Positions 22,720 to 37,514 are shown, counted from the stretch's first letter. The stretch: DNA of 64,000 bases from IMGVR_UViG_3300003322_000571:124001-188000, one strand, 5' to 3'. Made by a program: numbers and translations. The notes: generated by a model not told the origin, from the sequence alone.

Positions 22720-23073
22720 ATGGCCAAGATCGTTACGAAAGATTCCCTGCGAGACCTGCTGCTGAGCTCGCCTCAAGACAAGCAGGTCCGAATCATCGGT
22801 CGCGCTCTCGTTCGGATCATGGAGCGGCAAACGGAAGCCGAAAAGAGCCTGAAGATGACAACCGATTCGAACAACATCGGTTTCACCAGTGCAGATGCGA
22901 AGACGGGAACCAAGTCAGCGGAGTACTTCAAGCGGACTGGCCGTCTGATGCCGTTCGCGTTCGAGCGGTGGATCAGTGCTGACAGCACCGGCTATCCTCG
23001 GATCTGCCGCTACCATCGTCAACTCAACGAAGTCGCTGAGGCAAAAGCCGAAAGTGCCCAGTTGACTCTGTAA
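22720..23073 (+). CDS. Hypothetical protein
   Basis: GAGG RBS; N.IGFTSADA..G motif. Confidence 0.8.
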   Translation: MAKIVTKDSLRDLLLSSPQDKQVRIIGRALVRIMERQTEAEKSLKMTTDSNNIGFTSADAKTGTKSAEYFKRTGRLMPFAFERWISADSTGYPRICRYHRQLNEVAEAKAESAQLTL

Positions 23074-23098
23074 CCAAATGGGAGTATTATACTCCCAT
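23062..23098 (+). promoter_or_regulatory. Hairpin promoter class A
   Basis: TTGACT-17-TATTAT inside ATGGGAGTA-TTA-TACTCCCAT. Confidence 0.85.
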
Positions 23099-23116
23099 CA
23101 ATCAACGGAGTGCGAA

Positions 23117-23410
23117 ATGCAATTCTCGAAGGAACAGCTGATCTACATCGCGAGCAGCCTCGGCAACATGGACGTTGACTTCATGAAGCAGCTGGCGTGG
23201 GGAATGGTCGCCAATCACGCGGAAGTGATGGCGGAAATCTCCGAAAGCAGCGACATCCATACGCTGCCGAACACGAAGGACACCAAGGAACACGTCAAGG
23301 AGTACCTGTCCGACATGTTCCCGGAAATCCTCACGAAGCTGAAGGAGGAGATCGACGCGTGCCCGATCAACGTCAAGTACTCGTGGAGCGTCGACGTCAA
23401 GATGGAATGA
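23117..23410 (+). CDS. Acidic hypothetical protein
   Basis: GGAG RBS. Confidence 0.75.
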   Translation: MQFSKEQLIYIASSLGNMDVDFMKQLAWGMVANHAEVMAEISESSDIHTLPNTKDTKEHVKEYLSDMFPEILTKLKEEIDACPINVKYSWSVDVKME

Positions 23411-23527
23411 TGGACGGGGCCGGCTCAGGGGCAAGGGAGGGAGGAGGTGCCTGAGCGGTCAGGTGGCGATCCCGTCTCTCCCTGACCAGAGTCCGTCTAT
23501 AATACCGGAATCCATGCAGGAATGCAA
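23410..23527 (-). ncRNA. Candidate sRNA with anti-SD loop, with promoter
   Basis: TTGCAT-17-TATTAT; two 7-bp stems, loop CACCTCCTCCCTCCCTTGCC. Confidence 0.5.
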
Positions 23528-23639
23528 CGCCCATTAATAATGAGCTTGCAGTCCAGTATGGTATTGCTCTTTCTGTTGACTGTCTGATTTGTGCACTTAA
23601 TAATCTGCACAACTTAACAACCAACAGAAAGGGTCAATC

Positions 23640-23816
23640 ATGATCGTCGACAACTTCACGCGAGATATCCCCCAAGAAGACGAAAACCTGTCGCCGGCAC
23701 TGGGTGCGATGATGGGTGTGCTCGCCATGCCGCACCAGTACAGCCGTTTCGTCAACGACACGATGCTGTCGCTCAACATGCAGTGCCCGCAGTCTGCGCA
23801 CGTGATGGAAAAGTGA
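23640..23816 (+). CDS. Small hypothetical protein (58 aa)
   Basis: AAGGG RBS; fills the cassette. Confidence 0.6.
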   Translation: MIVDNFTRDIPQEDENLSPALGAMMGVLAMPHQYSRFVNDTMLSLNMQCPQSAHVMEK

Positions 23817-23820
23817 ACTG

Positions 23821-23858
23821 TTGACTTGTCGGCCGGATGGGAGTATTATGCTCCCATC
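23821..23858 (+). promoter_or_regulatory. Hairpin promoter class A
   Basis: TTGACT-17-TATTAT; GATGGGAGTA-TTA-TGCTCCCATC (T-G wobble). Confidence 0.85.
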
Positions 23859-23879
23859 GGTTAACAACCAGGAACACAA

Positions 23880-24275
23880 ATGTTCAAGACCACCCTGCAG
23901 AACATCCACGAAGTCGACGAGAGCGATTTCGGCTACGGACCGCACGTGTACGGCCTACTGCTCGAAGCGCAGGCCGAAGAGCTGGAAGTGACCGTCGTGC
24001 AACGTGTAATCGACAACGGCAACCCCGCGCACGACAATTACGACATCGTGCTCGATAACGGCCTGAAGGTCGATGCGGTGAGTGGTTACCACCTTGCCGA
24101 CATTCACAACTTCGTGGAGAATACGCACGAGTCGCAGTTCTGCCTCGCTGTGCAACATGGTGTCGATTTCGATCACGGTGTGTGGTCTGAACGGATCGAG
24201 TCCATGCTGCGCGATGCGGAGCAGAATCCGCATATTTCCATCTCGTACGAAACGACGTACGCCATTTCCAAGTGA
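23880..24275 (+). CDS. Acidic hypothetical protein
   Basis: AGGA RBS. Confidence 0.75.
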   Translation: MFKTTLQNIHEVDESDFGYGPHVYGLLLEAQAEELEVTVVQRVIDNGNPAHDNYDIVLDNGLKVDAVSGYHLADIHNFVENTHESQFCLAVQHGVDFDHGVWSERIESMLRDAEQNPHISISYETTYAISK

Positions 24276-24283
24276 AGGTCAAC

Positions 24284-24529
24284 ATGAAAAAGCACAACGG
24301 TTTCACGCTGATTGAACTGTTGATCGTTCTCGCGATCATCGGTATCCTGCTGGCAGTGGCGTTGCCTGCATGGCACAACTACCGCAACAACACCGCAGAA
24401 CCGAGCGGCCGCTACGGGCAGATCGGGCACGACCAGCCGCAAGCAGAATACGAATGCCGCGCTGGCGTTGTGATGAAACGCGACGGCAAGGCGCTGAAGT
24501 CGAGCAACGGCTCGATCGTGACCTGCTAA
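24284..24529 (+). CDS. Short type IV pilin-like protein
   Basis: MKKHNG/FTLIELLIVLAIIGILLAVALP prepilin motif with E5; C-terminal Cys pair. Confidence 0.9.
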   Translation: MKKHNGFTLIELLIVLAIIGILLAVALPAWHNYRNNTAEPSGRYGQIGHDQPQAEYECRAGVVMKRDGKALKSSNGSIVTC

Positions 24530-24549
24530 TACAAGTTACCTCCCTGTTT

Positions 24550-24590
24550 GGGCCGGGTTGAGCGCAAGCTCCCCGGCTCGTTTTTTATTC
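24550..24590 (+). terminator. Intrinsic terminator
   Basis: GGGCCGGG..GAGC-GCAA-GCTC-CCCGGCTC plus T tract. Confidence 0.8.
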
Positions 24591-24630
24591 CGAATCCAGC
24601 GCAGCAAACACACCTTCCCACTTTCCAAAT

Positions 24631-24659
24631 AGCATACGGCAAACTAGATGGTTTGGCAA
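24631..24659 (-). promoter_or_regulatory. Antisense sigma70-type promoter
   Basis: TTGCCA-17-TATGCT on the minus strand. Confidence 0.5.
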
Positions 24660-24725
24660 GTGTGGAAAGCCCTATTGTCCGTCTATCTCGTTTGGTGTAT
24701 ACTTGGTCATCAAGTGGAGATTTAG

Positions 24726-24851
24726 ATGCGACTCGTTGCTTACGTACTGATCCTTGGTTTTGCGTCGGGGTTGCTCGCACGCAATCCGTACATCGGTGCG
24801 TTGGCGGGAGTTGTGTGCTGGATCGTTGACACAATCATCAACAGGGAGTAA
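24726..24851 (+). CDS. Small membrane peptide (41 aa)
   Basis: GGAG RBS; MRLVAYVLILGFASGLLA... Confidence 0.55.
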   Translation: MRLVAYVLILGFASGLLARNPYIGALAGVVCWIVDTIINRE

Positions 24852-24853
24852 TC

Positions 24854-25048
24854 ATGGCACTCGTCATCACAATCATTTCCGCACTGATCCTTGTGATCGG
24901 CGGCATCGGTGCAATCGTTGGCGTTCTCGTTGGCGCAGCGTGGTGGGCGGGAGCGCTCACTGCGCTGATCAGCACGGTCGTGTTCATTATCATCCTGGTC
25001 GTCAGCCTGCTCGTGCTGGGATTCGCCAAGATGGACTCGTTGATCTGA
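24854..25048 (+). CDS. Very hydrophobic small membrane protein
   Basis: Two long TM helices. Confidence 0.75.
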   Translation: MALVITIISALILVIGGIGAIVGVLVGAAWWAGALTALISTVVFIIILVVSLLVLGFAKMDSLI

Positions 25049-25075
25049 ACAGCGAGACAGGTTACAATTGATCCC

Positions 25076-25327
25076 ATGAGTGGATATCTTGGTAACCCGG
25101 ACGCAGAGTCCGAACACGCACTGATCCTCGCTGAGAACGGGATCGATGCGGCACGTGCAATGTTGGCAGGTCCTGTTCTGGAAGACTGTCAGAACTGCGA
25201 TGAGCCGATCGATCCGAAGCGAGTCGCTGCGCTCCGTGCAAACGGCATGAAGTGCATGTACTGCATTATTTGCCAATCGAAGTTTGACGCTGCACCAAAG
25301 ATCAAAATGCTTGACCGCATCCTGTAA
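25076..25327 (+). CDS. TraR/DksA-type C4 zinc-finger protein
   Basis: CQNCDEPIDPKRVAA...CMYCIICQ; no DksA N-terminal extension. Confidence 0.85.
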   Translation: MSGYLGNPDAESEHALILAENGIDAARAMLAGPVLEDCQNCDEPIDPKRVAALRANGMKCMYCIICQSKFDAAPKIKMLDRIL

Positions 25328-25365
25328 GTGTGGGATAGTAGTCACATCAACAACTGAGGTGCAAC

Positions 25366-25626
25366 ATGCCTGCGATCAACATCTCCAACGAACTCGTCCG
25401 TGCCATCAATGCTGTGTGGGACTACATCGGTTCCGACTGCGAGCAGTGCGCCAATGAGTGCGGTGAAGAACTGACGAACGAGATGGCCATTGAGAGCTGC
25501 ATCGACGCCGATCGCCTGAAGACGAACGGTCACAAAGCTGCTGACAAGGAACTCCATGCGCTGATCGAGCAGCACGGTTACGGCCCCGTTGCCAAAGCCC
25601 TCGAGAAGAAGATCAGCCTGGCCTGA
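25366..25626 (+). CDS. Hypothetical protein
   Basis: GAGG RBS. Confidence 0.75.
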   Translation: MPAINISNELVRAINAVWDYIGSDCEQCANECGEELTNEMAIESCIDADRLKTNGHKAADKELHALIEQHGYGPVAKALEKKISLA

Positions 25627-25630
25627 TCTG

Positions 25631-25661
25631 TTGACAAAGCTAGTGTCCTACGGGACACTAG
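25631..25661 (+). promoter_or_regulatory. Hairpin promoter
   Basis: TTGACA-17-GACACT; CTAGTGTCC-TACG-GGACACTAG. Confidence 0.65.
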
Positions 25662-25691
25662 TAAACATCAACACAGTCACAGGTAAACATC

Positions 25692-25913
25692 ATGCCGATC
25701 ATCACTGCCCACGAGCTCGCTCGTCAACTGCTTGCGCAAGGCGACTACGAAGTGTGCTTGCTTGACGAAGGTGCAACGCACGGCTGGAGTATCGGCTCTG
25801 TTGTCTCTTGCCAAGGTCGGAGTGATGATTCCGAGCTGACGAAACCAATGGTCGTCATCACGATCGGCAACGGTCTGACGGAACTTCTTCCAAAACCGGA
25901 GCGTATGCAATGA
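25692..25913 (+). CDS. Hypothetical protein
   Basis: Cassette ORF. Confidence 0.7.
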   Translation: MPIITAHELARQLLAQGDYEVCLLDEGATHGWSIGSVVSCQGRSDDSELTKPMVVITIGNGLTELLPKPERMQ

Positions 25914-26212
25914 CAAGCGAAATGTTCAACAATGAGCCGACCGAGGAGCGGAAGGCGAAGCTTGAGCAGTTGCTCGGGCGGATGGAAGCTCCCGACGTGA
26001 TCGCGAAGCAATGTCAGATGTCGCACGCTGCGGTGTTCGCTCTGATCAACGCTCGGTCGTACACGGGGTTCAACAAGTGGTGGGCCCAGCAGGTCAGCGG
26101 CAGGCGTGCGATGCTGATCAACGACAAGTGGGCACTCGCAGAGGCTGCATATAGCGCAGGCCGTGAGGCACTCGCCGAAGAGATCGCGAAGTTGCGTGAT
26201 CAGCCGTTGTAA
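25910..26212 (+). CDS. Hypothetical protein
   Basis: Coupled ORF. Confidence 0.7.
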   Translation: MTSEMFNNEPTEERKAKLEQLLGRMEAPDVIAKQCQMSHAAVFALINARSYTGFNKWWAQQVSGRRAMLINDKWALAEAAYSAGREALAEEIAKLRDQPL

Positions 26213-26309
26213 TGTAGCAACTACAACACTCCAAAGGCAACAGGGCACTGCCCTGTTGCCTTCGCTGGTCAATTGTGCGATACTGGCTTCATTGTAATAA
26301 GGAGCTGAT

Positions 26310-26606
26310 ATGAGCCGACCGACGTCAGAAGAGATCCGCGCATTCGCTGCTCGTATGGAGCAGAACGACTTCTTTGAGCTCGTTGCTCATCATATGCTGT
26401 TCGTCGAGCAGGCGATCGCGACCGATGCGTTGGCAACAGAGCTCGACGCTGACGATACGTACAATCGCTCGTTGGCTCAGGAGCTGTTCCACGACCCAGA
26501 GTACCTCGCAAACTGCTGTGAGGCAACGCTGTCTGGCATGGGGTTTGAAGAAGCTGTCGTCGAGCAGCTGAAGCTGCTCGCTCCGTCGTACGTTCGGCCC
26601 CGTTGA
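26310..26606 (+). CDS. Acidic hypothetical protein
   Basis: AAGGAG RBS. Confidence 0.75.
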   Translation: MSRPTSEEIRAFAARMEQNDFFELVAHHMLFVEQAIATDALATELDADDTYNRSLAQELFHDPEYLANCCEATLSGMGFEEAVVEQLKLLAPSYVRPR

Positions 26607-26657
26607 TCAGTTTGGTCATTTGGGCGATACTGGACGCATTCAATCAAGGAGCGAGCT

Positions 26658-26983
26658 ATGAAGTACTGGAACGGCGTTGGCCGCCATCAGGCTGCGTACG
26701 ACGAGGTCAGCAAGCTGATCCCCGTCGAAGGTGCGTGCAATGACGCACAGACGACGAACAAGTCGCTCGACCTCCTGCGTCGTGCTACTACGATCTGTAC
26801 AACAACGGCCTGTGCAATCGCGCCAAGGAGTTCCGCACGATCTTCGGGTTTGGCGGTGAGAGTATCGCCAAGAACTTCGCAGATGTCAACGGGATGAACC
26901 TCCTTGACGAGAAGATGGATGTCCTGATCGAGAAGGCGTGCGTCGAACAAGGTCTCGCCCACTTGACATATCGCAAGAGCTGA
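26658..26983 (+). pseudogene. Frameshifted gene
   Basis: MKYWNG...LLRRA continues in the -1 frame from 26786 as YYDLYNNGLCNRAKEF... to TGA 26983. Confidence 0.65.
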
Positions 26984-27021
26984 GGGATACTGGCTTCACT
27001 GTCAACCACTGGAGAGCAAAC

Positions 27022-27315
27022 ATGGCGTACGTGATCTACAACGAAAAGACGTGCAAGCGATACGAGACCGAGCGTCGCACCGCGTCGTGGGCTCAGAAGG
27101 GCAGCGCCAAGAGCGTGCTGACCAAGGCGATCAAGAGCGGCGACATCAAGAACGGAGACGACTGGAAGGTCGGCACGTACGAAGAGTGGCAAGCGAACGA
27201 TCGCGACATCGAAGTGATCAGCGCGATGGACGGCAAGACCGTCTGCAAGATCAAGGCGAGCGAGAAGGGCAATCGCGTCAGCGACCCGAGCATGGAAGGT
27301 TACTGGACGATGTAA
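27022..27315 (+). CDS. Hypothetical protein
   Basis: GGAGAG RBS, own promoter TTGACA..GATACT. Confidence 0.8.
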   Translation: MAYVIYNEKTCKRYETERRTASWAQKGSAKSVLTKAIKSGDIKNGDDWKVGTYEEWQANDRDIEVISAMDGKTVCKIKASEKGNRVSDPSMEGYWTM

Positions 27316-27319
27316 GAAC

Positions 27320-27349
27320 AAGGAGCCTACGGGCTCCTTTTCGTTTTGT
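27320..27349. terminator. Bidirectional-type intrinsic terminator
   Basis: AAGGAGCC-TACG-GGCTCCTT plus T tract. Confidence 0.8.
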
Positions 27350-27446
27350 CAACTGGCAAAGTCGTTGTTCCGCTCTCGCTGTCCATCCCCAGGGTGCCTG
27401 ATCGAACGCATGCTGCTAGTATCGCATAGCTGTCCGTCGAAGTCAA
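27350..27446 (-). ncRNA. Candidate sRNA family X copy 3 with promoter
   Basis: TTGACT-17-GATACT then CATGCGTTCGA...GGGATGGACAGCGAGAGCG. Confidence 0.6.
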
Positions 27447-27449
27447 CTG

Positions 27450-27793
27450 TTGACAAGTTGGTTGTTTGGGCATATACTAGAACCATCTAATCGAGGATCA
27501 AAGACATGGACGTTCTAATCTTCCAAGGTGGTGAGTGCGTTACGGATGACCACCATGTTGTGATTGATGCATGGACCCAAGAAGCAATCGTCAAAGCATT
27601 GATTGAGCGTGAAGGGACTGACGAATGGCTCGAAGAGCAAGTAACTTTCCTTGAAGGAAACGTCACTGTACGTGATACGTTTGAATTTGTCAACGTCAAT
27701 ATGGCACAAATCGTGCTCGACGGGTACAACGGCGGAATGCTCTATATTATTCGTTGCTGACCCATTGACAAGTTGGTTGTTTGGGCATATACT
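27450..27793 (+). repeat. Identical 29-bp promoter duplicated
   Basis: TTGACAAGTTGGTTGTTTGGGCATATACT at 27450 and 27765. Confidence 0.9.
27506..27760 (+). CDS. Acidic small protein
   Basis: Cassette ORF. Confidence 0.75.
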   Translation: MDVLIFQGGECVTDDHHVVIDAWTQEAIVKALIEREGTDEWLEEQVTFLEGNVTVRDTFEFVNVNMAQIVLDGYNGGMLYIIRC

Positions 27794-27821
27794 GGCTTCA
27801 TTGATTCACAAAGGAGCAACC

Positions 27822-28064
27822 ATGTTTGGTCTGACGTTCGAACAAGTCAAGGCGATGTCCTCTGATCAAATCGCTGACGAAATCCTCCATAGCGACGAGA
27901 TGCAACGAGGCTACAGTGATGGCCACATGGACGCGCTGTTCGATGACGACCAAATCCTCAGCGAAAAGGATGCGTGCGAACAAGCAACGATCCGCAAGCA
28001 GCAAGAGGGCAACCATCCTGATTATCTCAAGGGCTATTGGGTTGGTCAAGTGTCGTTTGGCTGA
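27822..28064 (+). CDS. Acidic small protein
   Basis: AAGGAG RBS. Confidence 0.75.
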   Translation: MFGLTFEQVKAMSSDQIADEILHSDEMQRGYSDGHMDALFDDDQILSEKDACEQATIRKQQEGNHPDYLKGYWVGQVSFG

Positions 28065-28076
28065 ACGACTGCCCTG

Positions 28077-28114
28077 TTGACAAAGTGACCTGATGGGAGT
28101 ATTATACTCCCATC
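28077..28114 (+). promoter_or_regulatory. Hairpin promoter class A
   Basis: TTGACA-17-TATTAT; perfect 10-bp stem. Confidence 0.85.
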
Positions 28115-28136
28115 TTAAACGCATTGGAGAAACGAA

Positions 28137-28355
28137 ATGCCTCATCCGACACGAGCACAAGTTGAGAAGTTCCTCAACTACTACGAGCATGATCTCTCGG
28201 ACGAAGACGCAGCTGACCTCATCAACGAAGAGTATAGCGACCTCTATACTGATGACGAGATCGACAATGGTGCGATGGATCAACTGTTCGTGTACGTCGA
28301 CCACTATCGCAAACATGGTGTGTGGCCTGACGACTGTGTGCTCGCTGTTGCCTAA
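28137..28355 (+). CDS. Highly acidic small protein
   Basis: GGAG RBS; D/E-rich. Confidence 0.8.
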   Translation: MPHPTRAQVEKFLNYYEHDLSDEDAADLINEEYSDLYTDDEIDNGAMDQLFVYVDHYRKHGVWPDDCVLAVA

Positions 28356-28384
28356 GTGACCAAATGGGAGTATTATACTCCCAT
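28348..28384 (+). promoter_or_regulatory. Hairpin promoter class A
   Basis: TTGCCT-17-TATTAT. Confidence 0.8.
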
Positions 28385-28403
28385 CACTTACTGGAGAGCA
28401 GAC

Positions 28404-28547
28404 ATGAGCCACATCGCTACCCTCGAACGTCTACACGACGAAGCTGTTGCCTTCGGTGACGAAGAGGCAGCGGAGTTCTACTCCGAAGAGATCGACAACT
28501 ATTGGACGTGTCGCGAGGAAGAAGATCGTTTCGATCGCGACGCTTGA
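28404..28547 (+). CDS. Highly acidic peptide (47 aa)
   Basis: GGAGAG RBS. Confidence 0.75.
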   Translation: MSHIATLERLHDEAVAFGDEEAAEFYSEEIDNYWTCREEEDRFDRDA

Positions 28548-28551
28548 ACTG

Positions 28552-28589
28552 TTGTCTGTCTGACAATAAGATGGGATACTTATCCCATC
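28552..28589 (+). promoter_or_regulatory. Hairpin promoter
   Basis: TTGTCT-17-GATACT; GATGGGAT-ACTT-ATCCCATC. Confidence 0.8.
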
Positions 28590-28611
28590 TTAAACGCGCT
28601 GGAGAAGCGAA

Positions 28612-28941: not shown

Positions 28942-28945
28942 CCTG

Positions 28946-31370: not shown

Positions 31371-31459
31371 CGGACAAGATCAACAGGGGGCTTAGCCCCC
31401 TTGATTGAAGTGTCGTTGTGGTAGACGATAGCTCAATCAAAGTCACACAGGGATCGATC

Positions 31460-31681
31460 ATGAAGAAAGTTCCGAAGGACTACGCTGCGTTCCTCAAGCC
31501 GTACATCGATGCTCGAGTGCTGACGATCGAATCCGGATCGAAGCACAACAAGGCGGTTCGATCGGACGGTCGGTTCTGGGTGATCCCCAGCAGCCCGAGC
31601 GATCATCGCGGGTTCCTCAACTTCAAGAGCGATATCCGCCGGTTCGTCAGCCAAGCGCCGCAGCACCCCGTTGTCCAGTGA
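31460..31681 (+). CDS. HicA-like (dsRBD-fold) protein
   Basis: GSKHNK...PSSPSDHRGFLNFKSDIRRF. Confidence 0.65.
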   Translation: MKKVPKDYAAFLKPYIDARVLTIESGSKHNKAVRSDGRFWVIPSSPSDHRGFLNFKSDIRRFVSQAPQHPVVQ

Positions 31682-31711
31682 CGATCGTTGTGGGATAGTA
31701 CTCCCATCAAC
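31671..31711 (+). promoter_or_regulatory. Hairpin promoter
   Basis: TTGTCC-17-GATAGT; TGGGA/TCCCA stem. Confidence 0.8.
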
Positions 31712-31725
31712 AACTGGAGAGCAAC

Positions 31726-31914
31726 ATGCACACGGGCCACCACATCTCCAACTTCGTCCAGCGATTCGGCTGCACTGACGAGGTTATTGACGACGATCGG
31801 TTCATCGTTCTGTTCAACTGCATCGATGCTCCCGACCACATCGCGTGCGGTAGCGTGATCAACAACGGGCGTGATCAGCCTATCCAGAACTTCATCAGTC
31901 GCGACGATGAGTGA
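31726..31914 (+). CDS. Small hypothetical protein
   Basis: GGAGAG RBS. Confidence 0.7.
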   Translation: MHTGHHISNFVQRFGCTDEVIDDDRFIVLFNCIDAPDHIACGSVINNGRDQPIQNFISRDDE

Positions 31915-31918
31915 TCAG

Positions 31919-31959
31919 TTGACTTGAACGGCGGTTGGTGGGATAGTACTCCCATCAAC
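31919..31959 (+). promoter_or_regulatory. Hairpin promoter
   Basis: TTGACT-17-GATAGT; GTTGGTGGGA/TCCCATCAAC. Confidence 0.85.
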
Positions 31960-31973
31960 AACTGGAGAGCAAC

Positions 31974-32237
31974 ATGACTCTGTCGTACGAAGCCGCCAAG
32001 CAAGTGCAAATCGCCCTCGCCCTGCACGAGCGATATGTGCAGACGCTCGGCGCGGAGCAAGCGAAGGTGCAACTCGCAATCGGCTTCACGTGGCTTGCCG
32101 GCCACTATGTGACCGAAGCACCGCAAGCTGCTGACCTGCTGAACAAGGTCGGCGGTAGTGTCTTCTACGGATGCGGTAACGGTCAACGGAATTACGTCGA
32201 GATCAAGAACGACGTGTTCGTCACCGAAGTCCGTTGA
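31974..32237 (+). CDS. Hypothetical protein
   Basis: GGAGAG RBS. Confidence 0.75.
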   Translation: MTLSYEAAKQVQIALALHERYVQTLGAEQAKVQLAIGFTWLAGHYVTEAPQAADLLNKVGGSVFYGCGNGQRNYVEIKNDVFVTEVR

Positions 32238-32271
32238 CCTAAACATGGGATGGGAGTATGATACTCCCATC
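32234..32271 (+). promoter_or_regulatory. Hairpin promoter class A
   Basis: TTGACC-17-TATGAT; perfect 10-bp stem. Confidence 0.85.
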
Positions 32272-32294
32272 TTAACCGCACTGGAGGAACAACA

Positions 32295-32663
32295 ATGAAG
32301 AGCCAACAACCTCGACGCTCCGCTGGTGAAGGTCCTTGGATCGCGCTCGATGACATGCGCGCGTTCAAGCAGTTCCTCACCGACAACGGCTTCCAGTGGC
32401 GTGAGCATCCTGGCCTGAACAGCACCGGCTATCAAGTCCGCCACCAAGGGCACTGGATGGCGCTGCTGTGGAACAAGGGGTTCAAGCGGTTCACAGCAGA
32501 CCGTCGATTGTCGCTGATCGTCCAGTCGTTTGCAACGGAGAAGCCGAAGGATCAACGCGTTCCCGAGCTGCCGAAAGGCCCGATGGTCAAGTGCGTTCAC
32601 TGCGGCAACCTGTTCGAGCAGTACTTCGAGGGCGAAGACATGTGCGTTGACTGCGACGACTAA
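32295..32663 (+). CDS. Hypothetical protein with C-terminal C4 zinc ribbon
   Basis: CVHCGN...CVDC. Confidence 0.75.
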   Translation: MKSQQPRRSAGEGPWIALDDMRAFKQFLTDNGFQWREHPGLNSTGYQVRHQGHWMALLWNKGFKRFTADRRLSLIVQSFATEKPKDQRVPELPKGPMVKCVHCGNLFEQYFEGEDMCVDCDD

Positions 32664-32690
32664 TTGTGGGATAGTCGTCGCATAGTCAAC
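32646..32690 (+). promoter_or_regulatory. Hairpin promoter
   Basis: TTGACT-17-GATAGT; TGCGACGACTA/TAGTCGTCGCA plus GTTGAC/GTCAAC. Confidence 0.85.
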
Positions 32691-32701
32691 AGGAGTGCAC
32701 G

Positions 32702-32983
32702 ATGGAGTTCAAGATCACCGAGAAGACGGTTGAGATCCACGGCTACAAGGTCACGTGCAAGTGGACCGAAGAGCGAAATGCGATGTTCGGCCACAAGACG
32801 GGATCGGGATGGCTGCTGACGCGCACTCCGCTCGATAAGCACAGCGGCAAGACGAATGACACGTTGATCTACTGCGAGATCGGCGAGTACATGTGGGTGC
32901 CGAACGGCCGTGTTGGCACCACGAACGAGTCGGATCTGATTTCCGACAAGCGCCTGGAAGAAGTGCTGTGCACGTACTGGTGA
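32702..32983 (+). CDS. Hypothetical protein
   Basis: AGGAG RBS. Confidence 0.75.
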   Translation: MEFKITEKTVEIHGYKVTCKWTEERNAMFGHKTGSGWLLTRTPLDKHSGKTNDTLIYCEIGEYMWVPNGRVGTTNESDLISDKRLEEVLCTYW

Positions 32984-32984
32984 G

Positions 32985-33034
32985 CCGTTGACAAACAATC
33001 AGCTTGGTGGGATACTAAGCTCATTGTTCAACGG
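32985..33034 (+). promoter_or_regulatory. Hairpin promoter reaching the RBS
   Basis: TTGACA-17-GATACT; about 20-bp interrupted stem. Confidence 0.85.
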
Positions 33035-33042
33035 AGTACATC

Positions 33043-33336
33043 ATGTACGCATTCCTCTGCATCAATCCCGATCCCGCCAAGGACGGTGTTGCGATCCACC
33101 TGAGCGATGTCGCCTCGGTTGTTGCTTTCGAGCGCCTGTGGGAACGCATGAGCGACAAGATCCAGGACGAGTACAACTACGATCTGCCGGTCTTCGTCAA
33201 GGAAAGCGACGGCGAAACGCCGGTCGTCAACGTCAAGCCTGCGCAGTTCAAGCGCCTGTACATCGACAGCGTCGTGACGATGACTTTCGCTGGTTTCATC
33301 CAAGAAATCAACAAGTACATCGCCAGCCAAGAATGA
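33043..33336 (+). CDS. Hypothetical protein
   Basis: GGAG RBS. Confidence 0.75.
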   Translation: MYAFLCINPDPAKDGVAIHLSDVASVVAFERLWERMSDKIQDEYNYDLPVFVKESDGETPVVNVKPAQFKRLYIDSVVTMTFAGFIQEINKYIASQE

Positions 33337-33340
33337 CCAG

Positions 33341-33385
33341 TTGATCTTGGATCCGTTTGGTCAGATACTAGACGGATCTAATCAA
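33341..33385 (+). promoter_or_regulatory. Hairpin promoter class B
   Basis: TTGATC-17-GATACT; 15-bp stem, 3 G-T pairs. Confidence 0.85.
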
Positions 33386-33394
33386 GGAGTCAAC

Positions 33395-33700
33395 ATGTCC
33401 CGAATCGCTTTAGCTCACGGCTACATTGAGCAGCTGGTGGCAGGTGCTGAGATCGTGAGCACTCGCGAGACCGATCACGCTGTCGACTGCATGGTCGTGC
33501 ACCCGAAGCGAAAGATCGACCCGACCAGCTTTGCCCGCGCTGCGAAGAAGTACAGCCTGATCGTTGGTTGCACACCGAGTGCGAGCAACCGCAACAAGCT
33601 GATCGTCGCCTACATCACCGTGGCCGACCGCTCTGCCGAGCTGTGCGTCAAGGGCACGAATGAGGGCCCTGTGCACGTCGAAGTGCGCTTTAGGGGTTGA
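33395..33700 (+). CDS. Hypothetical protein
   Basis: AAGGAG RBS. Confidence 0.75.
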   Translation: MSRIALAHGYIEQLVAGAEIVSTRETDHAVDCMVVHPKRKIDPTSFARAAKKYSLIVGCTPSASNRNKLIVAYITVADRSAELCVKGTNEGPVHVEVRFRG

Positions 33701-33732
33701 CCTCAACTGCGTTCGGTGGGATACTGGACGCA
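33697..33732 (+). promoter_or_regulatory. Hairpin promoter class B
   Basis: TTGACC-17-GATACT; 10-bp stem, 2 G-T pairs. Confidence 0.8.
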
Positions 33733-33752
33733 TCCAATCAAAGGAGGCCATC

Positions 33753-33995
33753 ATGGTCAAGGTGATTCAAGTCGAAAGCGGTGTCGTTCGTCAGATGGAG
33801 TTCGAGCAGTTCAACAAGAGCACGATCCTTAGCCTGGTCAACGACGACTCGGACAACGTGTTCGAAGACAAGCACATCCATGTCGTCGAGCAGCCCGGCA
33901 TTGTCGCCTGTTCCGTTCTCCATGACAACGGCCTGGCGCTGGTGACGTTCATCGGTGACACCGCATCGTGGCAGGTCGGCCAGTTGACCGAGTGA
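33753..33995 (+). CDS. Hypothetical protein
   Basis: AAGGAGG RBS. Confidence 0.75.
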   Translation: MVKVIQVESGVVRQMEFEQFNKSTILSLVNDDSDNVFEDKHIHVVEQPGIVACSVLHDNGLALVTFIGDTASWQVGQLTE

Positions 33996-34019
33996 GCGGT
34001 TGGGAGTATCATACTCCCA
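33984..34019 (+). promoter_or_regulatory. Hairpin promoter class A
   Basis: TTGACC-17-TATCAT. Confidence 0.85.
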
Positions 34020-34038
34020 TCACTTCAAGGACCTCATC

Positions 34039-34251
34039 ATGAGTCTACCGCACATTGGCGTCGGAATGGACGTCTGCTTCCGCAGTAAGGTGTTCACTGC
34101 ACCTTACACGCCGCACTTTGACGCGTACAAGGGACACAAGTTCACCGTCGTTGCGATCCATCCTGGCGAACACGTTGCGCTCAAGTGTACGTCTGATCCA
34201 TCGCTGACCGTCAATGGACACGTTCACGCAGACGAGTTGAAGCGGCTGTGA
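34039..34251 (+). CDS. Small SH3/KOW-like hypothetical protein
   Basis: Beta-rich, VGMDV.F...FTVVAI. Confidence 0.65.
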   Translation: MSLPHIGVGMDVCFRSKVFTAPYTPHFDAYKGHKFTVVAIHPGEHVALKCTSDPSLTVNGHVHADELKRL

Positions 34252-34255
34252 CCTG

Positions 34256-34291
34256 TTGTCTTAGTAAGCGTTTGGGAGTACCATACTCCCA
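34256..34291 (+). promoter_or_regulatory. Hairpin promoter class A
   Basis: TTGTCT-17-TACCAT. Confidence 0.8.
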
Positions 34292-34309
34292 TCACTTCAA
34301 GGAGCCGAC

Positions 34310-34522
34310 ATGTTCTTCACGATGACGCCCGAACAAGAAGCAACGTTCAACCGAGTGTGCGAACGAGCTCGCCAGGCATCGCACGACGACTCGTGCACAC
34401 AGCACGTCAACATGCGTGTCCATCTTCGCGGGAACGAGATCCATGCGGAGTTCCTCGTCTCCGACTGGTACGACAGCGACTGCACAGTCCGTTCGTACGA
34501 CGACGGGCGGCTGAAGGACTGA
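34310..34522 (+). CDS. Small hypothetical protein
   Basis: AAGGAG RBS. Confidence 0.75.
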   Translation: MFFTMTPEQEATFNRVCERARQASHDDSCTQHVNMRVHLRGNEIHAEFLVSDWYDSDCTVRSYDDGRLKD

Positions 34523-34599
34523 GCGAAGAGGGCAGATGCCCTCTTGATCTGAGTGTTGTTCTAGGGGACAATACTCACATCATTTACGCTTACGGAATC

Positions 34600-34836
34600 A
34601 TGACCCTCGTTGTCGAAAATGTCAACGCGCTGATGACAGCGCCCGTCGAAGAAACGCAGATCGAACTGCACAGCGTCACTCTGACACTGCGTCGCACAAA
34701 CGGCCACAGCTTCTACCTGCAGGGGAAGATCGATGGCCGCATCGTTCATGTCCGAGACCGCAACACGCACGTTGCAACGTTCAGCCGCAATGAGCTCGTC
34801 CAGCGGCTGCTCGACGGCAATTACGAAATCGGTTGA
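34600..34836 (+). CDS. Small hypothetical protein
   Basis: Cassette ORF. Confidence 0.7.
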   Translation: MTLVVENVNALMTAPVEETQIELHSVTLTLRRTNGHSFYLQGKIDGRIVHVRDRNTHVATFSRNELVQRLLDGNYEIG

Positions 34837-34870
34837 CATCGCCGGTGATAGGTGGGATACTCACTTATCA
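34833..34870 (+). promoter_or_regulatory. Hairpin promoter
   Basis: TTGACA-17-GATACT; TGATAGGTGGG/CTCACTTATCA. Confidence 0.8.
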
Positions 34871-34885
34871 ATAGGGAGAGCAGGC

Positions 34886-35116
34886 ATGCGCAACTTTCTG
34901 TTCCGTATCGGCGATGCAGAGATGAAAAACGGCAAGTGGGCGGCGGTGATCGATTCGTATGCGACCCGCCCCAACGGTGAAGTGTCGCACAAGTCGTCGC
35001 GGATCACTTCCGCAGCGATCTTTGAGTCGGAGGTCGCTGCAATCGAGGGCGCTGATCGTGCTCTCGTCCACCTGGAAGCGACTGGTGAGTTCCCCAACCT
35101 TTGTGAGCCTTTCTGA
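34886..35116 (+). CDS. Small hypothetical protein
   Basis: GGGAGAG RBS. Confidence 0.7.
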   Translation: MRNFLFRIGDAEMKNGKWAAVIDSYATRPNGEVSHKSSRITSAAIFESEVAAIEGADRALVHLEATGEFPNLCEPF

Positions 35117-35391
35117 TGGACATCATTATCACCCAGCAGATCGCCACGCACAACGGCTGGACGGTCCGAATCAACCGCAACGCCGCTGGTCACTGGACGC
35201 TGCTGCGCAATGCGTCCCATCATCCGATGATTCCGCCGTTGACACAACAGCTGATCCAACGTGACGGGATGACGATGTGGGTCGGCATCATCGGTGAAGA
35301 AAAGAAGGCCGGCGACATCGTTGTCGTGGTCAGCTCGGAAGTGCTTGAGGACATCATCAAGCAGACGTGCGCCACTCCTCCCTCTCGTTGA
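35116..35391 (+). CDS. Hypothetical protein
   Basis: TGATG coupling. Confidence 0.65.
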   Translation: MDIIITQQIATHNGWTVRINRNAAGHWTLLRNASHHPMIPPLTQQLIQRDGMTMWVGIIGEEKKAGDIVVVVSSEVLEDIIKQTCATPPSR

Positions 35392-35429
35392 CCTTACGTG
35401 CAACTTGGTATACAATTACCACATTGCAC
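35388..35429 (+). promoter_or_regulatory. Hairpin promoter
   Basis: TTGACC-17-TACAAT; GTGCAA/TTGCAC plus TGGTA/TACCA. Confidence 0.75.
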
Positions 35430-35443
35430 AATAGGAGCCAACA

Positions 35444-35650
35444 ATGGCACACGTACTACCGGAACAACTGATTGATGAGCTGAAGAAGTCCGCTGCTCGT
35501 CAAACCGCTCGAGAGCAAGCAGGTGACTACCTGTTCATCGAGCGTGCCCACTTCGACAGCGACTTCGAAGCGACGTACGCAGGCGGCGTTGACGATGGTC
35601 ATACGATCGCAGCGCGCTCTGTGTTGACTGCGCTCGGCATCCAGTGGTGA
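35444..35650 (+). CDS. Small hypothetical protein
   Basis: AGGAG RBS. Confidence 0.7.
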   Translation: MAHVLPEQLIDELKKSAARQTAREQAGDYLFIERAHFDSDFEATYAGGVDDGHTIAARSVLTALGIQW

Positions 35651-35657
35651 AGTCAAC

Positions 35658-35927
35658 ATGATCGTCGTCATCCATGAAGACCAGTGCGAGCACCTCGCTG
35701 CACTGTCACACTACAACCACAACTACTACAAGCTGCCATTCAAGGTCAACGACTGCGACACCGTGTTCGCGTCGTACGACGGTGCTGACAACTTCAACGG
35801 CCACGAGCTCGGCAATATCGTCGACGGCAAGTTCGAGGTCAAATTCTACCTCCATACGTACGACAAAGATGATAGCACATTCATCTTCGACAGCAAAGAG
35901 CTGAGCGAGACGAACAAGTGGACGTGA
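35658..35927 (+). CDS. Hypothetical protein
   Basis: Operonic ORF. Confidence 0.7.
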   Translation: MIVVIHEDQCEHLAALSHYNHNYYKLPFKVNDCDTVFASYDGADNFNGHELGNIVDGKFEVKFYLHTYDKDDSTFIFDSKELSETNKWT

Positions 35928-35931
35928 CCTG

Positions 35932-35972
35932 TTGACATTGGTCAATTGTTACCTTATAGTTGTTGTAACAAT
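35932..35972 (+). promoter_or_regulatory. Hairpin promoter
   Basis: TTGACA-17-TATAGT; ATTGTTAC/GTAACAAT. Confidence 0.8.
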
Positions 35973-35987
35973 AAAAGGGGTAACTAA

Positions 35988-36287
35988 ATGGCAGTCGATT
36001 TTCTCAATCAGCCGCTGGAAGTCAACGCAGTCGTCATCATGACGCTGCCGAAGTATGCTGACATCTGCGTCGGTGTTGTCAAGAAGGTGACGCCGCAGCG
36101 AGTGCGTGTGGTCTACCGAGACCATAACGACTACGCCAGTGAGATTGTCGTCGAGCACGGCACGGTGATGGTGACTACGCACGAGGTCGCGCTCAAGCGG
36201 GCACGGTTCATTCGCCTGAAGGCGGTTGAAGCTGATCTGCTCAACCGTGCAGACATGAACGACGGCGATCTTCCGGCAGGGCGCTGA
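35988..36287 (+). CDS. Hypothetical protein
   Basis: Cassette ORF. Confidence 0.75.
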   Translation: MAVDFLNQPLEVNAVVIMTLPKYADICVGVVKKVTPQRVRVVYRDHNDYASEIVVEHGTVMVTTHEVALKRARFIRLKAVEADLLNRADMNDGDLPAGR

Positions 36288-36294
36288 TGCTCCG

Positions 36295-36348
36295 TTGATC
36301 TCGACCTCACACGGTGGGATAGTACTCCCATCATGTGAGGGAGATCAA
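36295..36348 (+). promoter_or_regulatory. Hairpin promoter sequestering the RBS
   Basis: TTGATC-17-GATAGT; stem runs from the -35 to the A of ATG 36348. Confidence 0.85.
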
Positions 36349-36677
36349 TGATGACTGTCGCAGCACCGTTCCATCCAGCAAAGCACGTCTACCAAAAAGA
36401 CGACCAAGTTGCCGTTGAGTATCAATACGGCCGGTGGTACTTTGGCACGATCCTATGGATCGAACAAGGCTTTGGCAACCTCAAGTTCGCTGTCGTCCGT
36501 CCCGACGATGATCGGTACATCGCGACGTTCGGTAGCAGCCGTGACATGAGCAACGGCTACAAGGGTTACATCTGCAACGACCCGCTGCTCAACCACATCG
36601 TCCCTCTCGAGCACTATGTGTGGGCGAGTGAGCTGACTGCACAGCAGCGGATGGAAGCGTACAAGCTGATTGCTTAA
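36348..36677 (+). CDS. Hypothetical protein
   Basis: GAGGGAG RBS. Confidence 0.75.
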   Translation: MMTVAAPFHPAKHVYQKDDQVAVEYQYGRWYFGTILWIEQGFGNLKFAVVRPDDDRYIATFGSSRDMSNGYKGYICNDPLLNHIVPLEHYVWASELTAQQRMEAYKLIA

Positions 36678-36762
36678 TTGTCAACATGTGGGCTATCAAC
36701 TGCCCACTGTTGACTTTCGTCGTGGGCGACGTTATGATCGAGTCATTGTACAGGAGGTAGAG

Positions 36763-37008
36763 ATGTCTCTCAAAGACGAGATCGAAGCAAAGCGCAAGGA
36801 GATTGCGGCGCTCGAGCAATCGATTGGCGATCGCAAGCGTGAGCTGACCGCACTGGAGAACAGCCGCGTCAAGTGTGCACATACGTTCTCCGCTGCCGTC
36901 CGTGGCTACGAACACGAAGGTGGTCACTGCACGAAGTGCGGGATCAATCAGCTCCACGCCGACACGCTTGCGTGGCAATATCGCACTGGCCGCCCGTTGA
37001 CGGCTTAA
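36763..37008 (+). CDS. Coiled-coil plus Cys/His motif protein
   Basis: GGAGG RBS; CAH...HCTKCG. Confidence 0.7.
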   Translation: MSLKDEIEAKRKEIAALEQSIGDRKRELTALENSRVKCAHTFSAAVRGYEHEGGHCTKCGINQLHADTLAWQYRTGRPLTA

Positions 37009-37028
37009 CATTTTTAAAGGACAATACT

Positions 37029-37460
37029 ATGTCGGTTCGACAACAAGCGATCGCTGACGTCAAGCTGTGCGAGCGAGTGACGGCGCGCGACGGTGAAGAC
37101 TCTGTCCGTCACTACATGGCGGCGTTCAAGAAGACGTTCGCTCCGCTCGTCAAGGCGGCGCTCGGCACGTCGATCGAGCATGACGACATCGAATCGCTCG
37201 AGATCGACAGCGCAGGTGACCTGTACATCCGCACGTCGTGGGTCAGCATGGGATGTGCTGACGGCAACACGTACATCCTCCCCGCTCACATCATCGACGC
37301 TGCCGATCCGTTGCATGCTGCGACTGTACATCATCTGAAGAAGCAAATCAACGATGCGCAGTCGTACGTCGCACACAAAGAGGCAGAACTGGAACGTGCC
37401 GAACGGTCGCTGGAAGAGCTGAAGAACAGCCTCGCACTTGTTCTCGAACAGAACAGTTGA
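37029..37460 (+). CDS. Family C paralogue
   Basis: LEID..GDLYI...W...G...Y.LP..I. Confidence 0.75.
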   Translation: MSVRQQAIADVKLCERVTARDGEDSVRHYMAAFKKTFAPLVKAALGTSIEHDDIESLEIDSAGDLYIRTSWVSMGCADGNTYILPAHIIDAADPLHAATVHHLKKQINDAQSYVAHKEAELERAERSLEELKNSLALVLEQNS

Positions 37461-37499
37461 CATCTAGTTGAGTGTGGTGTATGCTGCACTCAACTAGAT
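37457..37499 (+). promoter_or_regulatory. Hairpin promoter
   Basis: TTGACA-17-TATGCT; 16-bp stem with 2 G-T pairs. Confidence 0.85.
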
Positions 37500-37514
37500 C
37501 AATAGGGGCCTATC

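What the first reader, a model, noticed from the sequence alone, without database searches (positions are those of the whole stretch)
23062..37502. Array of about 30 promoter-RBS-single-ORF cassettes bounded by repeated elements
Seen: the (GA)TGGGAGTA-NNN-TACTCCCA(TC) element or its TGGGA-TAGTAC-TCCCA variant recurs at 23078, 23836, 28092, 28364, 28570, 28962, 31687, 31934, 32249, 34001, 34273 and 36315. A 29-bp promoter is duplicated exactly (27450, 27765), and the CAACTGGAGAGCAACATG leader is repeated. Each unit carries one 50-130 aa ORF, and the -35 often overlaps the previous stop codon. Established: PeSL promoter stem-loop cassettes mediate modular shuffling in T4-type phages. Inference: a recombinogenic gene-cassette array (a phage analogue of an integron array) for turning over anti-defence genes.
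Basis: partly seen in the sequence, partly recalled or inferred. Interest (0 to 1): 0.72.

Follow-up and report, generated by a model that had tools for sequence, protein, structure and literature searches.

The report
Shuffling promoter-hairpin cassettes in jumbo phage
A 25-kb stretch of a 350-kb root-metagenome phage holds about 65 tiny genes, nearly every one behind its own host-type promoter with a built-in hairpin. Close relatives differ by whole promoter-plus-gene units cut at those promoters, which is the modular shuffling known from T4-type phages but with a new promoter layout.

Summary
The palindrome TGGGAGTA-N3-TACTCCCA and its variants occur 13 times, only at window 22.7-36.3 kb of a complete 350-kb jumbo phage genome (0 expected by chance). 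It is not a boundary element. It is an inverted repeat that straddles the -10 box of sigma70-type promoters.

About 44 such promoters stand in tandem from 13.2 to 38.1 kb, each driving 1-3 small, mostly orphan ORFs. Other promoters have the same geometry with different, compensating arm sequences, and two relatives share the design.

Cassette turnover is shown by comparison:
- Relatives at 95-98% nucleotide identity lack single cassettes, with junctions at the -10 core (GATACTGG), inside the exact 29-bp repeat, or at a 5-bp CTGAC at stop codons.
- One segment is replaced, from the leader of one gene to the next start codon.
- A relative at about 70% amino-acid identity shows two swaps of neighbouring cassettes, seven or eight unique cassettes, a hybrid promoter and a promoter-only indel.

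The genome has no integrase or Y1 transposase, only a RecA/UvsX-like gene. No anti-defence function could be assigned to the cargo.

Best reading: a PeSL-like hyperplastic early region shuffled by short-homology recombination at promoter modules. The hairpin probably replaces a separate intercistronic RNA hairpin. This is a new variant of a known kind.

The parts
13180..38100 (+). Whole array: about 65 small + strand genes with about 44 tandem sigma70-type promoters. GC is 54-57% and GC3 0.73, against 0.49 in the rest of the genome.
23062..23116 (+). Class A promoter module: -35, palindrome TGGGAGTA-TTA-TACTCCCA around the -10 TATTAT, then the leader ATCAATCAACGGAG. Conserved at the orthologous place in relative L045.
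23821..23879 (+). Class A promoter module with one G.T position in the stem. Orthologous copy in L045.
28077..28136 (+). Class A promoter module (10-bp stem, 3-nt loop).
28348..28403 (+). Class A promoter module.
28553..28611 (+). Variant palindrome (TGGGATA-CT-TATCCCA) in a promoter module that shares its leader with 28077 and 32234.
28946..29000 (+). Class A promoter module. About 37 nt are identical to the module at 23062.
32234..32294 (+). Class A promoter module before gene 32295. Absent at this place in the 97% relative (another gene overlaps the ATG there) and in L018 (a different promoter).
33984..34038 (+). Class A promoter module. A 47-nt promoter-only indel relative to L018, where the two flanking genes overlap (ATGA). 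Present in the 97% relative.
34256..34309 (+). Class A promoter module (loop CCA) before gene 34310, a window-specific cassette.
31671..31728 (+). Class B promoter module. First copy of the exact 39-bp repeat (31690-31728). The 97% relative diverges after 31712, inside this leader.
31919..31976 (+). Class B promoter module. Second copy of the exact 39-bp repeat (31938-31976). The two copies flank ORF 31726-31914, which is absent from L018.
36295..36347 (+). Class B core nested in a second, outer 7-bp inverted repeat.
30770..30824 (+). GATACT-class promoter with arms GATGCGTC/GACGCATC around the -10. Representative of the modules at 31096, 32647, 32988, 33341, 33697, 34833 and 37457, whose arms differ but stay complementary.
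27450..27793 (+). Exact 29-bp repeat (-35 to -10) at 27450 and 27765, flanking cassette 27506-27760. The 95-97% relative L044 has one copy and lacks the 315-bp unit.
26634..26985 (+). 352-bp cassette (gene 26658, frameshifted here) absent from L044. The junction is the shared GATACTGG of two neighbouring -10 boxes, which leaves a hybrid promoter.
31088..31366 (+). 279-bp cassette (promoter plus ORF 31155-31370) absent from the 97% relative in two runs. 5-bp CTGAC microhomology at the two stop codons. In L018 the homologue lies on the other side of gene 30825.
31713..32292 (+). Segment replaced by unrelated sequence in the 97% relative. It runs from just after the ribosome-binding site of one module to 2 nt before the ATG of gene 32295.
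27320..27339 (+). Canonical intrinsic terminator. Others lie at 29367-29395, 30019-30047, 31385-31401 and 34526-34545. Promoters that follow such hairpins lack the hairpin around the -10.
24284..24529 (+). Cargo example: 81-aa protein with a type IV pilin N-terminal methylation motif.
25076..25327 (+). Cargo example: 83-aa DksA/TraR-like zinc-finger protein.

Best explanation
This is the hyperplastic early-gene region of an uncultivated jumbo phage. It is built from compact regulatory modules of about 55-60 bp: the previous stop codon at or just before a TTGAC -35, a 17-nt spacer, an (extended) -10, and an A/T-rich leader with a GGAG ribosome-binding site. Each module drives one to three small ORFs.

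Hairpin: an inverted repeat with one arm in the spacer and one arm just after the -10 is part of the module. Transcripts that read through from upstream promoters would carry it as an RNA hairpin between cistrons. I infer that it does the job that a separate terminator-type hairpin does in the longer intergenic regions, that is, a 3'-end barrier, weak terminator or insulator for the upstream message.

Shuffling: almost all modules share the same short blocks (-35 with the stop codon, the TGGGATACT-type -10 core, the leader). The phage's general recombination system (a RecA/UvsX-like gene is present, no site-specific recombinase) can therefore cross over between modules. The results are single-cassette deletions and insertions, replacements, swaps of neighbours and hybrid promoters.

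Status of each step:
- Shown: the architecture, its conservation with compensatory changes, and cassette-level differences with junctions inside the modules.
- Inferred: use by host RNA polymerase, early timing, the RNA-level role of the hairpin, and the recombination pathway.
For: Promoters:
- 56 sigma70-like sites against 10.6 +/- 3.0 expected.
- Genome-wide, such sites followed by a ribosome-binding site and start codon peak at 24 per 10 kb in the array.

Hairpin:
- Native spacer/-10/downstream segments fold at -11.5 kcal/mol, against -6.9 for chimeras of left and right halves from different promoters (n=44, p=3e-6).
- The same holds in relatives L018 (-14.0 vs -7.8, p=8e-4) and L021 (-14.7 vs -8.9, p=3e-6), whose arm sequences are quite different.
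- In 11 promoters from three genomes, 83% of cells pair against 69% in shuffles (0/500) and 28-38% when the partners are slid. 11 of 16 pairs change on both sides.
- Promoters that abut the previous stop codon have strong hairpins (-14.7), while those preceded by a separate spacer, usually holding a terminator hairpin, do not (-6.8; p=7e-5).

Shuffling, at nucleotide resolution:
- L044 (95-97% identical) lacks 26634-26985 with the junction at GATACTGG, and lacks the unit between the 29-bp repeats at 27450/27765.
- The soil relative (95-99% identical) skips 31088-31366 at CTGAC in two runs, and replaces 31713-32292.

Shuffling, at gene level:
- L018 swaps 31155/30825 and 32702/33043, lacks 31726, 34310 and 35444, and has four ORFs of its own.
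- L018 has a hybrid promoter and a promoter-only indel.
- L045 has an extra cassette flanked by a TTGATCT(G/A)A repeat.
- The junctions (5-29 bp) are shorter than the assembler's 31-letter words, and L018/L019 are independent assemblies that are 99.97% identical. Misassembly is therefore unlikely.

Recombination genes: RecA/UvsX-like present, integrase and Y1 transposase absent.

Cargo: the ORFs are unrelated to one another apart from one pair.
Against: - No transcript data exist (all holders are metagenomic DNA runs), so promoter use, timing and read-through are inferred from consensus only.
- The hairpins around the -10 are not followed by a T-tract and are not called as terminators.
- The test meant to separate RNA from DNA pairing is neutral. 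Outside the conserved core there are 3 G.T and 3 A.C mismatches. The sense-over-antisense stability comes mainly from G.U pairs inside the shared -10 core.
- Breakpoints in intergenic modules could partly reflect survival of rearrangements that keep ORFs intact.
- One junction has only 5 bp of homology, which fits illegitimate rather than homologous recombination.
- Circles or active recombination were not observed. The source run is held only as contigs, and its apparent joints are cross-matches between similar modules.
Confidence: 0.6

Rival explanations
1. DNA-level hairpin promoters. The inverted repeat extrudes as a cruciform, or as a hairpin on one strand, and presents the -10 single-stranded. 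This would make these promoters supercoil-dependent or the target of a special polymerase or factor, as with the hairpin promoters of phage N4 virion RNA polymerase.
For: - Class A stems are perfect, 8-10 bp with a 3-nt loop.
- Stems outside the core are almost purely Watson-Crick (150 WC against 8 other) with no excess of G.T over A.C.
- The right arm lies upstream of the predicted start, so a promoter's own transcript does not contain the hairpin.
Against: - Clear -35/-10 consensus at a 17-nt spacing, far above chance.
- Loop sizes vary from 3 to about 15 nt.
- The hairpin is dispensable when a separate upstream hairpin exists, which a promoter-melting role does not predict.
- No T7-like polymerase domain was found, although that control search was silent and the result is weak. 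No sigma region 4 was found.
- The 3,239-aa ORF matches a virion structural family, not a polymerase.
Confidence: 0.15
2. Ordinary early promoters with no special recombination role. The modules are alike only because they are promoters, and the differences between relatives are generic illegitimate or short-homology events filtered by selection. On this view the hairpin is an unrelated feature.
For: - Junction homologies are short (5-8 bp in two of four mapped events).
- No dedicated recombinase.
- No circles were seen.
Against: - All mapped junctions (four at nucleotide level, about ten at gene level) fall in modules that make up roughly a fifth of the sequence.
- Two window-specific or variable cassettes are flanked by exact 29-bp and 39-bp repeats.
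- Hybrid promoters join a left half and a right half exactly at the -10.
Confidence: 0.15
3. Integron-like site-specific system. The hairpins act as folded recombination sites (attC-like) for a recombinase that excises and inserts cassettes.
For: - Structure is conserved with variable sequence, as in attC sites.
- Indels have single-cassette granularity.
Against: - No tyrosine recombinase and no Y1/HUH transposase in a complete genome.
- Junctions lie at -35/stop, at the -10 core, in the leader or at the ATG, not at one fixed position in the hairpin.
- Every cassette carries its own promoter.
Confidence: 0.04
4. The class A palindrome is an operator for a dimeric phage or host regulator that switches off a subset of early promoters.
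For: It is a perfect 19-bp palindrome centred on the -10 and repeated 9-10 times with near-identical sequence.
Against: - Most other promoters have the same geometry with unrelated arm sequences, and these co-vary. A sequence-specific operator does not predict this.
- No regulator was identified.
Confidence: 0.06

Closest known systems
PeSL (promoter-early stem-loop) cassettes of T4-type phages (Arbiol et al. 2010, PMC2839356; Comeau et al. 2014, PMC4122927)
   Same: - Strong sigma70-like promoter plus stem-loop plus Shine-Dalgarno, forming a small repeated intergenic module in regions rich in orphan ORFs.
- Indels, replacements and displacements between close relatives are bounded by the modules.
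- Crossovers map between the -10 and the ATG.
- No dedicated recombinase.
   Different: - In PeSLs the stem-loop lies just upstream of the promoter and is an effective terminator. Here, in the compact modules, it straddles the -10 and has no T-tract.
- The phage is not T4-type. Its nearest deposited kin, by a conserved virion protein, are XacN1, Xoo-sp13 and RAS14 at 36-37% identity.
- Density is higher, with about 44 promoters in 25 kb.
- Mini-circles were not tested.
Integron cassette arrays
   Same: Tandem single-gene cassettes separated by imperfect palindromes whose structure, not sequence, is conserved. Turnover happens cassette by cassette.
   Different: No IntI-type integrase. Cassettes each carry a promoter instead of sharing Pc. 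Junctions lie at several positions. The array sits in a lytic-type jumbo phage genome.
Morons of lambdoid phages (promoter-gene-terminator units inserted between genes)
   Same: Self-contained transcription units that appear as indels between relatives. Here, 31088-31366 starts at its own -35 and ends at its own stop codon.
   Different: Morons are isolated insertions. Here they form a continuous array with shared modules that overlap the neighbouring stop codon.
Hairpin promoters of phage N4 virion RNA polymerase
   Same: Short perfect stem with a 3-nt loop centred near position -11 (class A).
   Different: N4 promoters lack sigma70 -35/-10 elements and need a giant virion polymerase. Here the sigma70 consensus is strong and no such polymerase was found.
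Intercistronic REP-type or stabiliser hairpins in bacterial operons (from my own knowledge)
   Same: GC-rich hairpins without a T-tract between cistrons that can protect upstream mRNA. This is the role I infer here.
   Different: REP elements are separate from promoters and are spread over the host chromosome. This palindrome is absent from bacterial genomes beyond chance (9 singletons in 596 Gb).

Membership tests
PeSL regulatory cassettes | Sigma70-like early promoter in each module | tested here: met
   Consensus only: 56 sites against 10.6 expected; aligned modules. No transcript data.
PeSL regulatory cassettes | Stem-loop just upstream of the promoter, acting as a terminator | tested here: not met
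   In 20-25 compact modules the stem-loop encloses the -10 and has no T-tract. About 12-20 longer intergenic regions do have the PeSL-like upstream hairpin.
PeSL regulatory cassettes | Clustered in hyperplastic regions with small orphan ORFs | tested here: met
   65 genes in 25 kb. Pfam hits for 1 of 46, and one tested protein has no homologue among 5.8 billion proteins. Only a minority are shared with the more distant relative L021.
PeSL regulatory cassettes | Indels and exchanges between close relatives bounded by the modules | tested here: met
PeSL regulatory cassettes | Formation of mini-circles by recombination between neighbouring modules | not testable with these tools
   Only assembled contigs of the source run are held. 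Inverse PCR or raw long reads are needed.
Integron | IntI-type tyrosine recombinase | tested here: not met
   PF00589 has no match in the complete genome, while the control rang in 14 of 14 genomes.
Integron | attC sites with conserved core sites at the 3' end of promoterless cassettes | tested here: not met
   Each cassette has its own promoter, and the hairpin lies in the promoter at the 5' side of the ORF. No attC model was available, so the core-site motif itself was not scored.
N4-type hairpin promoters | Giant virion RNA polymerase with a T7-like catalytic domain | tested here: inconclusive
   PF00940 found nothing, but its control rang nowhere. The 3,239-aa ORF matches phrog_10938, a virion structural protein.
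N4-type hairpin promoters | Promoter defined by the hairpin, without -35/-10 hexamers | tested here: not met
   TTGAC-17-TATTAT/GATACT is present in nearly all modules.
Intrinsic terminators | GC-rich stem followed by a T-tract | tested here: not met
   The hairpins around the -10 are followed by sequences such as ATCAATCAA and are not called by the scan. Separate canonical terminators exist at 27320, 29367 and 30019.

The most novel reading that the evidence does not exclude
The hairpin that encloses the -10 box defines a previously undescribed bifunctional element in which one 40-nt stretch is both a promoter on DNA and an intercistronic structure on read-through RNA (or a cruciform switch). 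In addition, the class A palindromic version would be a mobile promoter that can insert on its own between coupled genes and so create new transcription units. Three observations suggest this: the 47-nt promoter-only indel at 33996-34046; class A copies at non-orthologous places in the window and in L018; and orthologous class A copies at two other sites in L045.
Probability: 0.2. Interest if true: 0.75.

Novelty: new variant of a known kind. Interest (0 to 1): 0.55.

Why it matters
- It extends promoter-mediated modular shuffling, so far documented only in T4-type phages, to an unrelated clade of soil and root jumbo phages. It does so with junctions mapped to the base in natural populations.
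- It shows a more compact module in which the hairpin and the promoter overlap. That gives a clean system for asking what such hairpins do and how short a homology phage recombination needs.
- The array is a ready-made list of about 65 early orphan genes that turn over quickly. These are the class of genes in which host-takeover and counter-defence functions are usually found, but none is identified here.

Tried and rejected
- **Close relatives in deposited phages.** Megablast and blastn of the array found nothing except a 54-nt pilin N-terminus match to Xanthomonas phages BUDD and X1. tblastn of gene 32295 found nothing.
- **Exact scans for the palindrome.** IMG/VR and JGI metagenome contigs gave 0 hits. 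Bacterial genomes gave 9 singletons, which is chance level.
- **57% relatives in IMG/VR (L007-L013).** None holds the palindrome.
- **XacN1 and RAS14.** They have dispersed consensus promoters, not such an array. Their downstream arms were not examined.
- **Homologues of gene 29488 (L014-L017) and of gene 32295 in other phages (L020, L040-L043).** They lie in ordinary, mostly coupled gene runs.
- **Rfam.** No family matched.
- **G.T versus A.C mismatch test.** Meant to decide between RNA and DNA pairing; uninformative at 3 against 3.
- **Apparent joints in the source run.** The pairs 32290>34001 and 33741>31000 are cross-matches of similar modules elsewhere in the array, not rearrangements.
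- **Protein atlas searches.** Two cargo proteins gave only unnamed clusters.
- **Cluster look-ups.** 30 array proteins yielded only the relatives already found.
- **P0033.** The contig of this 55% homologue could not be fetched.
- **Not used.** Structure prediction and complex prediction, because no binding claim is made.

Full report
**Context**

The window is bases 124,001-188,000 of a single 350,089-bp contig. IMG/VR classes the contig as a complete virus with direct terminal repeats.

- It encodes tail, baseplate, neck, topoisomerase and ligase proteins.
- A conserved 982-aa virion protein is 36-37% identical to proteins of Xanthomonas phages XacN1 and Xoo-sp13 and of Stenotrophomonas phages RAS14 and CM1.
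- The only run that holds the region in full is a root metagenome.

**The observation**

- The palindrome TGGGAGTA-N3-TACTCCCA has 9 sites with up to 2 mismatches, against 0 expected.
- With the two variants there are 13 sites, all between 22,679 and 36,315 and nowhere else in the genome.
- The 29-bp and 39-bp exact repeats are real.
- Sigma70-like sites are fivefold enriched (56 against 10.6 +/- 3.0).

**What the element is**

I aligned the 95 nt upstream of every called gene. This shows a repeated module:

- the previous stop codon in or just before a TTGAC -35 (19 of 35 cases);
- a 17-nt spacer;
- a -10 of the TATTAT or (TG)GGATACT type;
- a leader such as ATCAATCAAGGAG, with the ATG 24-32 nt after the -10.

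The palindrome is the spacer end plus the -10 plus the first bases after it. It is therefore part of the promoter and not a boundary between cassettes. Genome-wide the density peaks here.

**The hairpin is a selected feature, not only a repeat**

- Other promoters have different arms in the same place, for example GATGCGTC/GACGCATC at 30,770 and GATCCGT/ACGGATC at 33,341.
- Native segments fold much better than chimeras that combine the left half of one promoter with the right half of another: -11.5 against -6.9 kcal/mol, p=3e-6.
- Two relatives recovered through homologues of gene 32295 have the same design with yet other arms, such as GAGGAG/CTCCTC and TGAGGG/CCCTCA. The relatives are L018/L019 (60-89% amino-acid identity) and the more distant L021-L024. 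The same statistics hold there.
- On an ungapped alignment of 11 promoters from the three genomes, 83% of cells pair against 69% in shuffles (0/500) and 28-38% when partners are slid. 11 of 16 pairs change on both sides.

**What the hairpin may do**

The right arm ends about where transcription should start. A promoter's own RNA therefore lacks the hairpin, and only read-through RNA from upstream promoters would contain it.

- Nearly every non-coupled intergenic region has one strong hairpin. In short gaps (38-72 nt) it encloses the -10. In long gaps it is a separate terminator-like hairpin upstream of or overlapping the -35, and the promoter then lacks its own.
- Promoters that abut the previous stop codon fold at -14.7 kcal/mol and the others at -6.8 (p=7e-5).
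- This mutual exclusion is my main reason to place the function on the upstream transcript, as a barrier, weak terminator or insulator, rather than on promoter melting.

This reading remains an inference:

- There is no T-tract after the hairpins.
- The G.T against A.C test is neutral.
- The greater stability of the sense strand rests on G.U pairs inside the shared -10 core.

**Cassette turnover, close relatives**

A soil metagenome holds a relative at 95-99% identity.

- In two of its runs a contig skips 31,088-31,366. This is exactly one promoter-plus-ORF unit, and the 5-bp CTGAC at the two stop codons is shared by both sides.
- The same relative follows the window to 31,712 (inside the leader, after the GGAG region begins) and then continues into a different ORF. 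It rejoins the window at 32,293, two bases before the ATG of gene 32295, where another gene's stop overlaps that ATG.
- Elsewhere the order 32295-32702-33043-33395-33753-34039 is the same as in the window, and contigs bridge those promoters.

A second close relative, L044, is 95.5-97.2% identical.

- It lacks 26,634-26,985. The two flanks overlap by GATACTGG, the -10 boxes of two neighbouring promoters, which leaves a hybrid promoter.
- It has one copy of the 29-bp repeat where the window has two, and so lacks cassette 27506.
- Upstream of 26,238, at a terminator hairpin, identity collapses to a divergent allele of gene 25910.
- The cassette lost from L044 is frameshifted in the window.

**Cassette turnover, more distant relative**

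The comparison uses L018 and L045.

- Two pairs of neighbours are in the opposite order (31155/30825 and 32702/33043).
- Three window cassettes are missing: 31726 (the one between the 39-bp repeats), 34310 and 35444.
- Five ORFs are unique to the relative.
- The promoter between the homologues of 32295 and 33043 joins the left half of the window's 32702 promoter to the right half of its 33043 promoter.
- The class A module at 33,984 is a 47-nt indel between two genes that overlap in L018.
- An extra L045 cassette is flanked by a repeat of the -35 plus stop codon.
- Class A modules are orthologous at 23,079 and 23,838 but not at 32,251, 34,001 or 34,273. L018 carries two at other places.

**Reliability**

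The junction homologies (5-29 bp) are below the assembler's word length. L018 and L019 come from two samples and agree at 99.97%. The skip at 31,088 is seen in two runs. Assembly artefacts are therefore unlikely.

**Machinery and cargo**

- The genome has no tyrosine recombinase and no Y1 transposase, but it has a RecA/UvsX-like gene.
- Cargo ORFs are unrelated to each other except 28612/29001.
- Only a pilin-like N-terminus, a DksA/TraR-like zinc finger and PHROG families of unknown function were recognised. Two atlas searches gave nothing usable.
- An anti-defence role is therefore possible but unsupported.

**Comparison and verdict**

The system works like the PeSL cassettes of T4-type phages but fails one defining feature, the position and terminator nature of the stem-loop. 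It also lies in an unrelated phage clade. It is not an integron, and it is unlikely to be an N4-type promoter set. I rate it a new variant of a known kind.

Noticed in passing
window 13200-38300 versus the rest of the genome: Array genes have GC 0.57 and GC3 0.73, against 0.48 and 0.49 for all other genes. The array of relative L021 is also GC-richer than its flank (0.56 against 0.51). Possible causes are host-like codon use for early genes or a foreign origin.
   Followed up: partly
whole genome (G000); window 60171-60467: ARAGORN finds 56 tRNA genes, among them two with anticodon CTA (amber-reading) at genome 332868 and 344214, and one odd 4-base anticodon call. No recoding was assumed or tested.
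   Followed up: no
window 24284-24529: 81-aa early protein with a type IV pilin N-terminal methylation motif (PF07963, 3.9e-11). The only DNA-level match of the array to deposited phages is this motif, in Xanthomonas phages BUDD and X1. It could interfere with host pili.
   Followed up: partly
window 26658-26983: Gene 26658 looks frameshifted. Its N-terminal part stops at 26897, and a second frame, open from 26744, runs to a stop at 26983 in the next promoter. This is the cassette missing from relative L044.
   Followed up: partly
window 43220-45462 and 7999-9621 (- strand): Two tandem families of four paralogous genes each, at 30-50% identity, outside the array.
   Followed up: no
window 21110-21595 (- strand): The only clear minus-strand gene inside the + strand block. 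Its homologue in relative L046 carries a SprT-like domain.
   Followed up: no
L021 8744-9193; L020 159-974; L043 9185-10642: Relatives and other phages that carry the gene 32295 homologue encode an SmpB-like protein (L021), a SIR2-domain protein nearby (L020) and a TnpB/IS605 OrfB (L043). The 32295 N-terminal domain occurs in many unrelated phage contexts.
   Followed up: no
L016 2735-2800: A distant phage contig found through gene 29488 has a consensus promoter whose -10 is enclosed by a 12-bp inverted repeat. The design may therefore reach beyond this clade.
   Followed up: no
window 10100-11550: Divergent junction between a minus-strand gene block and the long plus-strand block. It is a 1.4-kb stretch in which no gene was called.
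   Followed up: no
window 41753, 45532, 58514: Downstream of the array, in the lower-GC part, a few hairpins that enclose -10-like boxes carry T-tracts and look like ordinary terminators.
   Followed up: no
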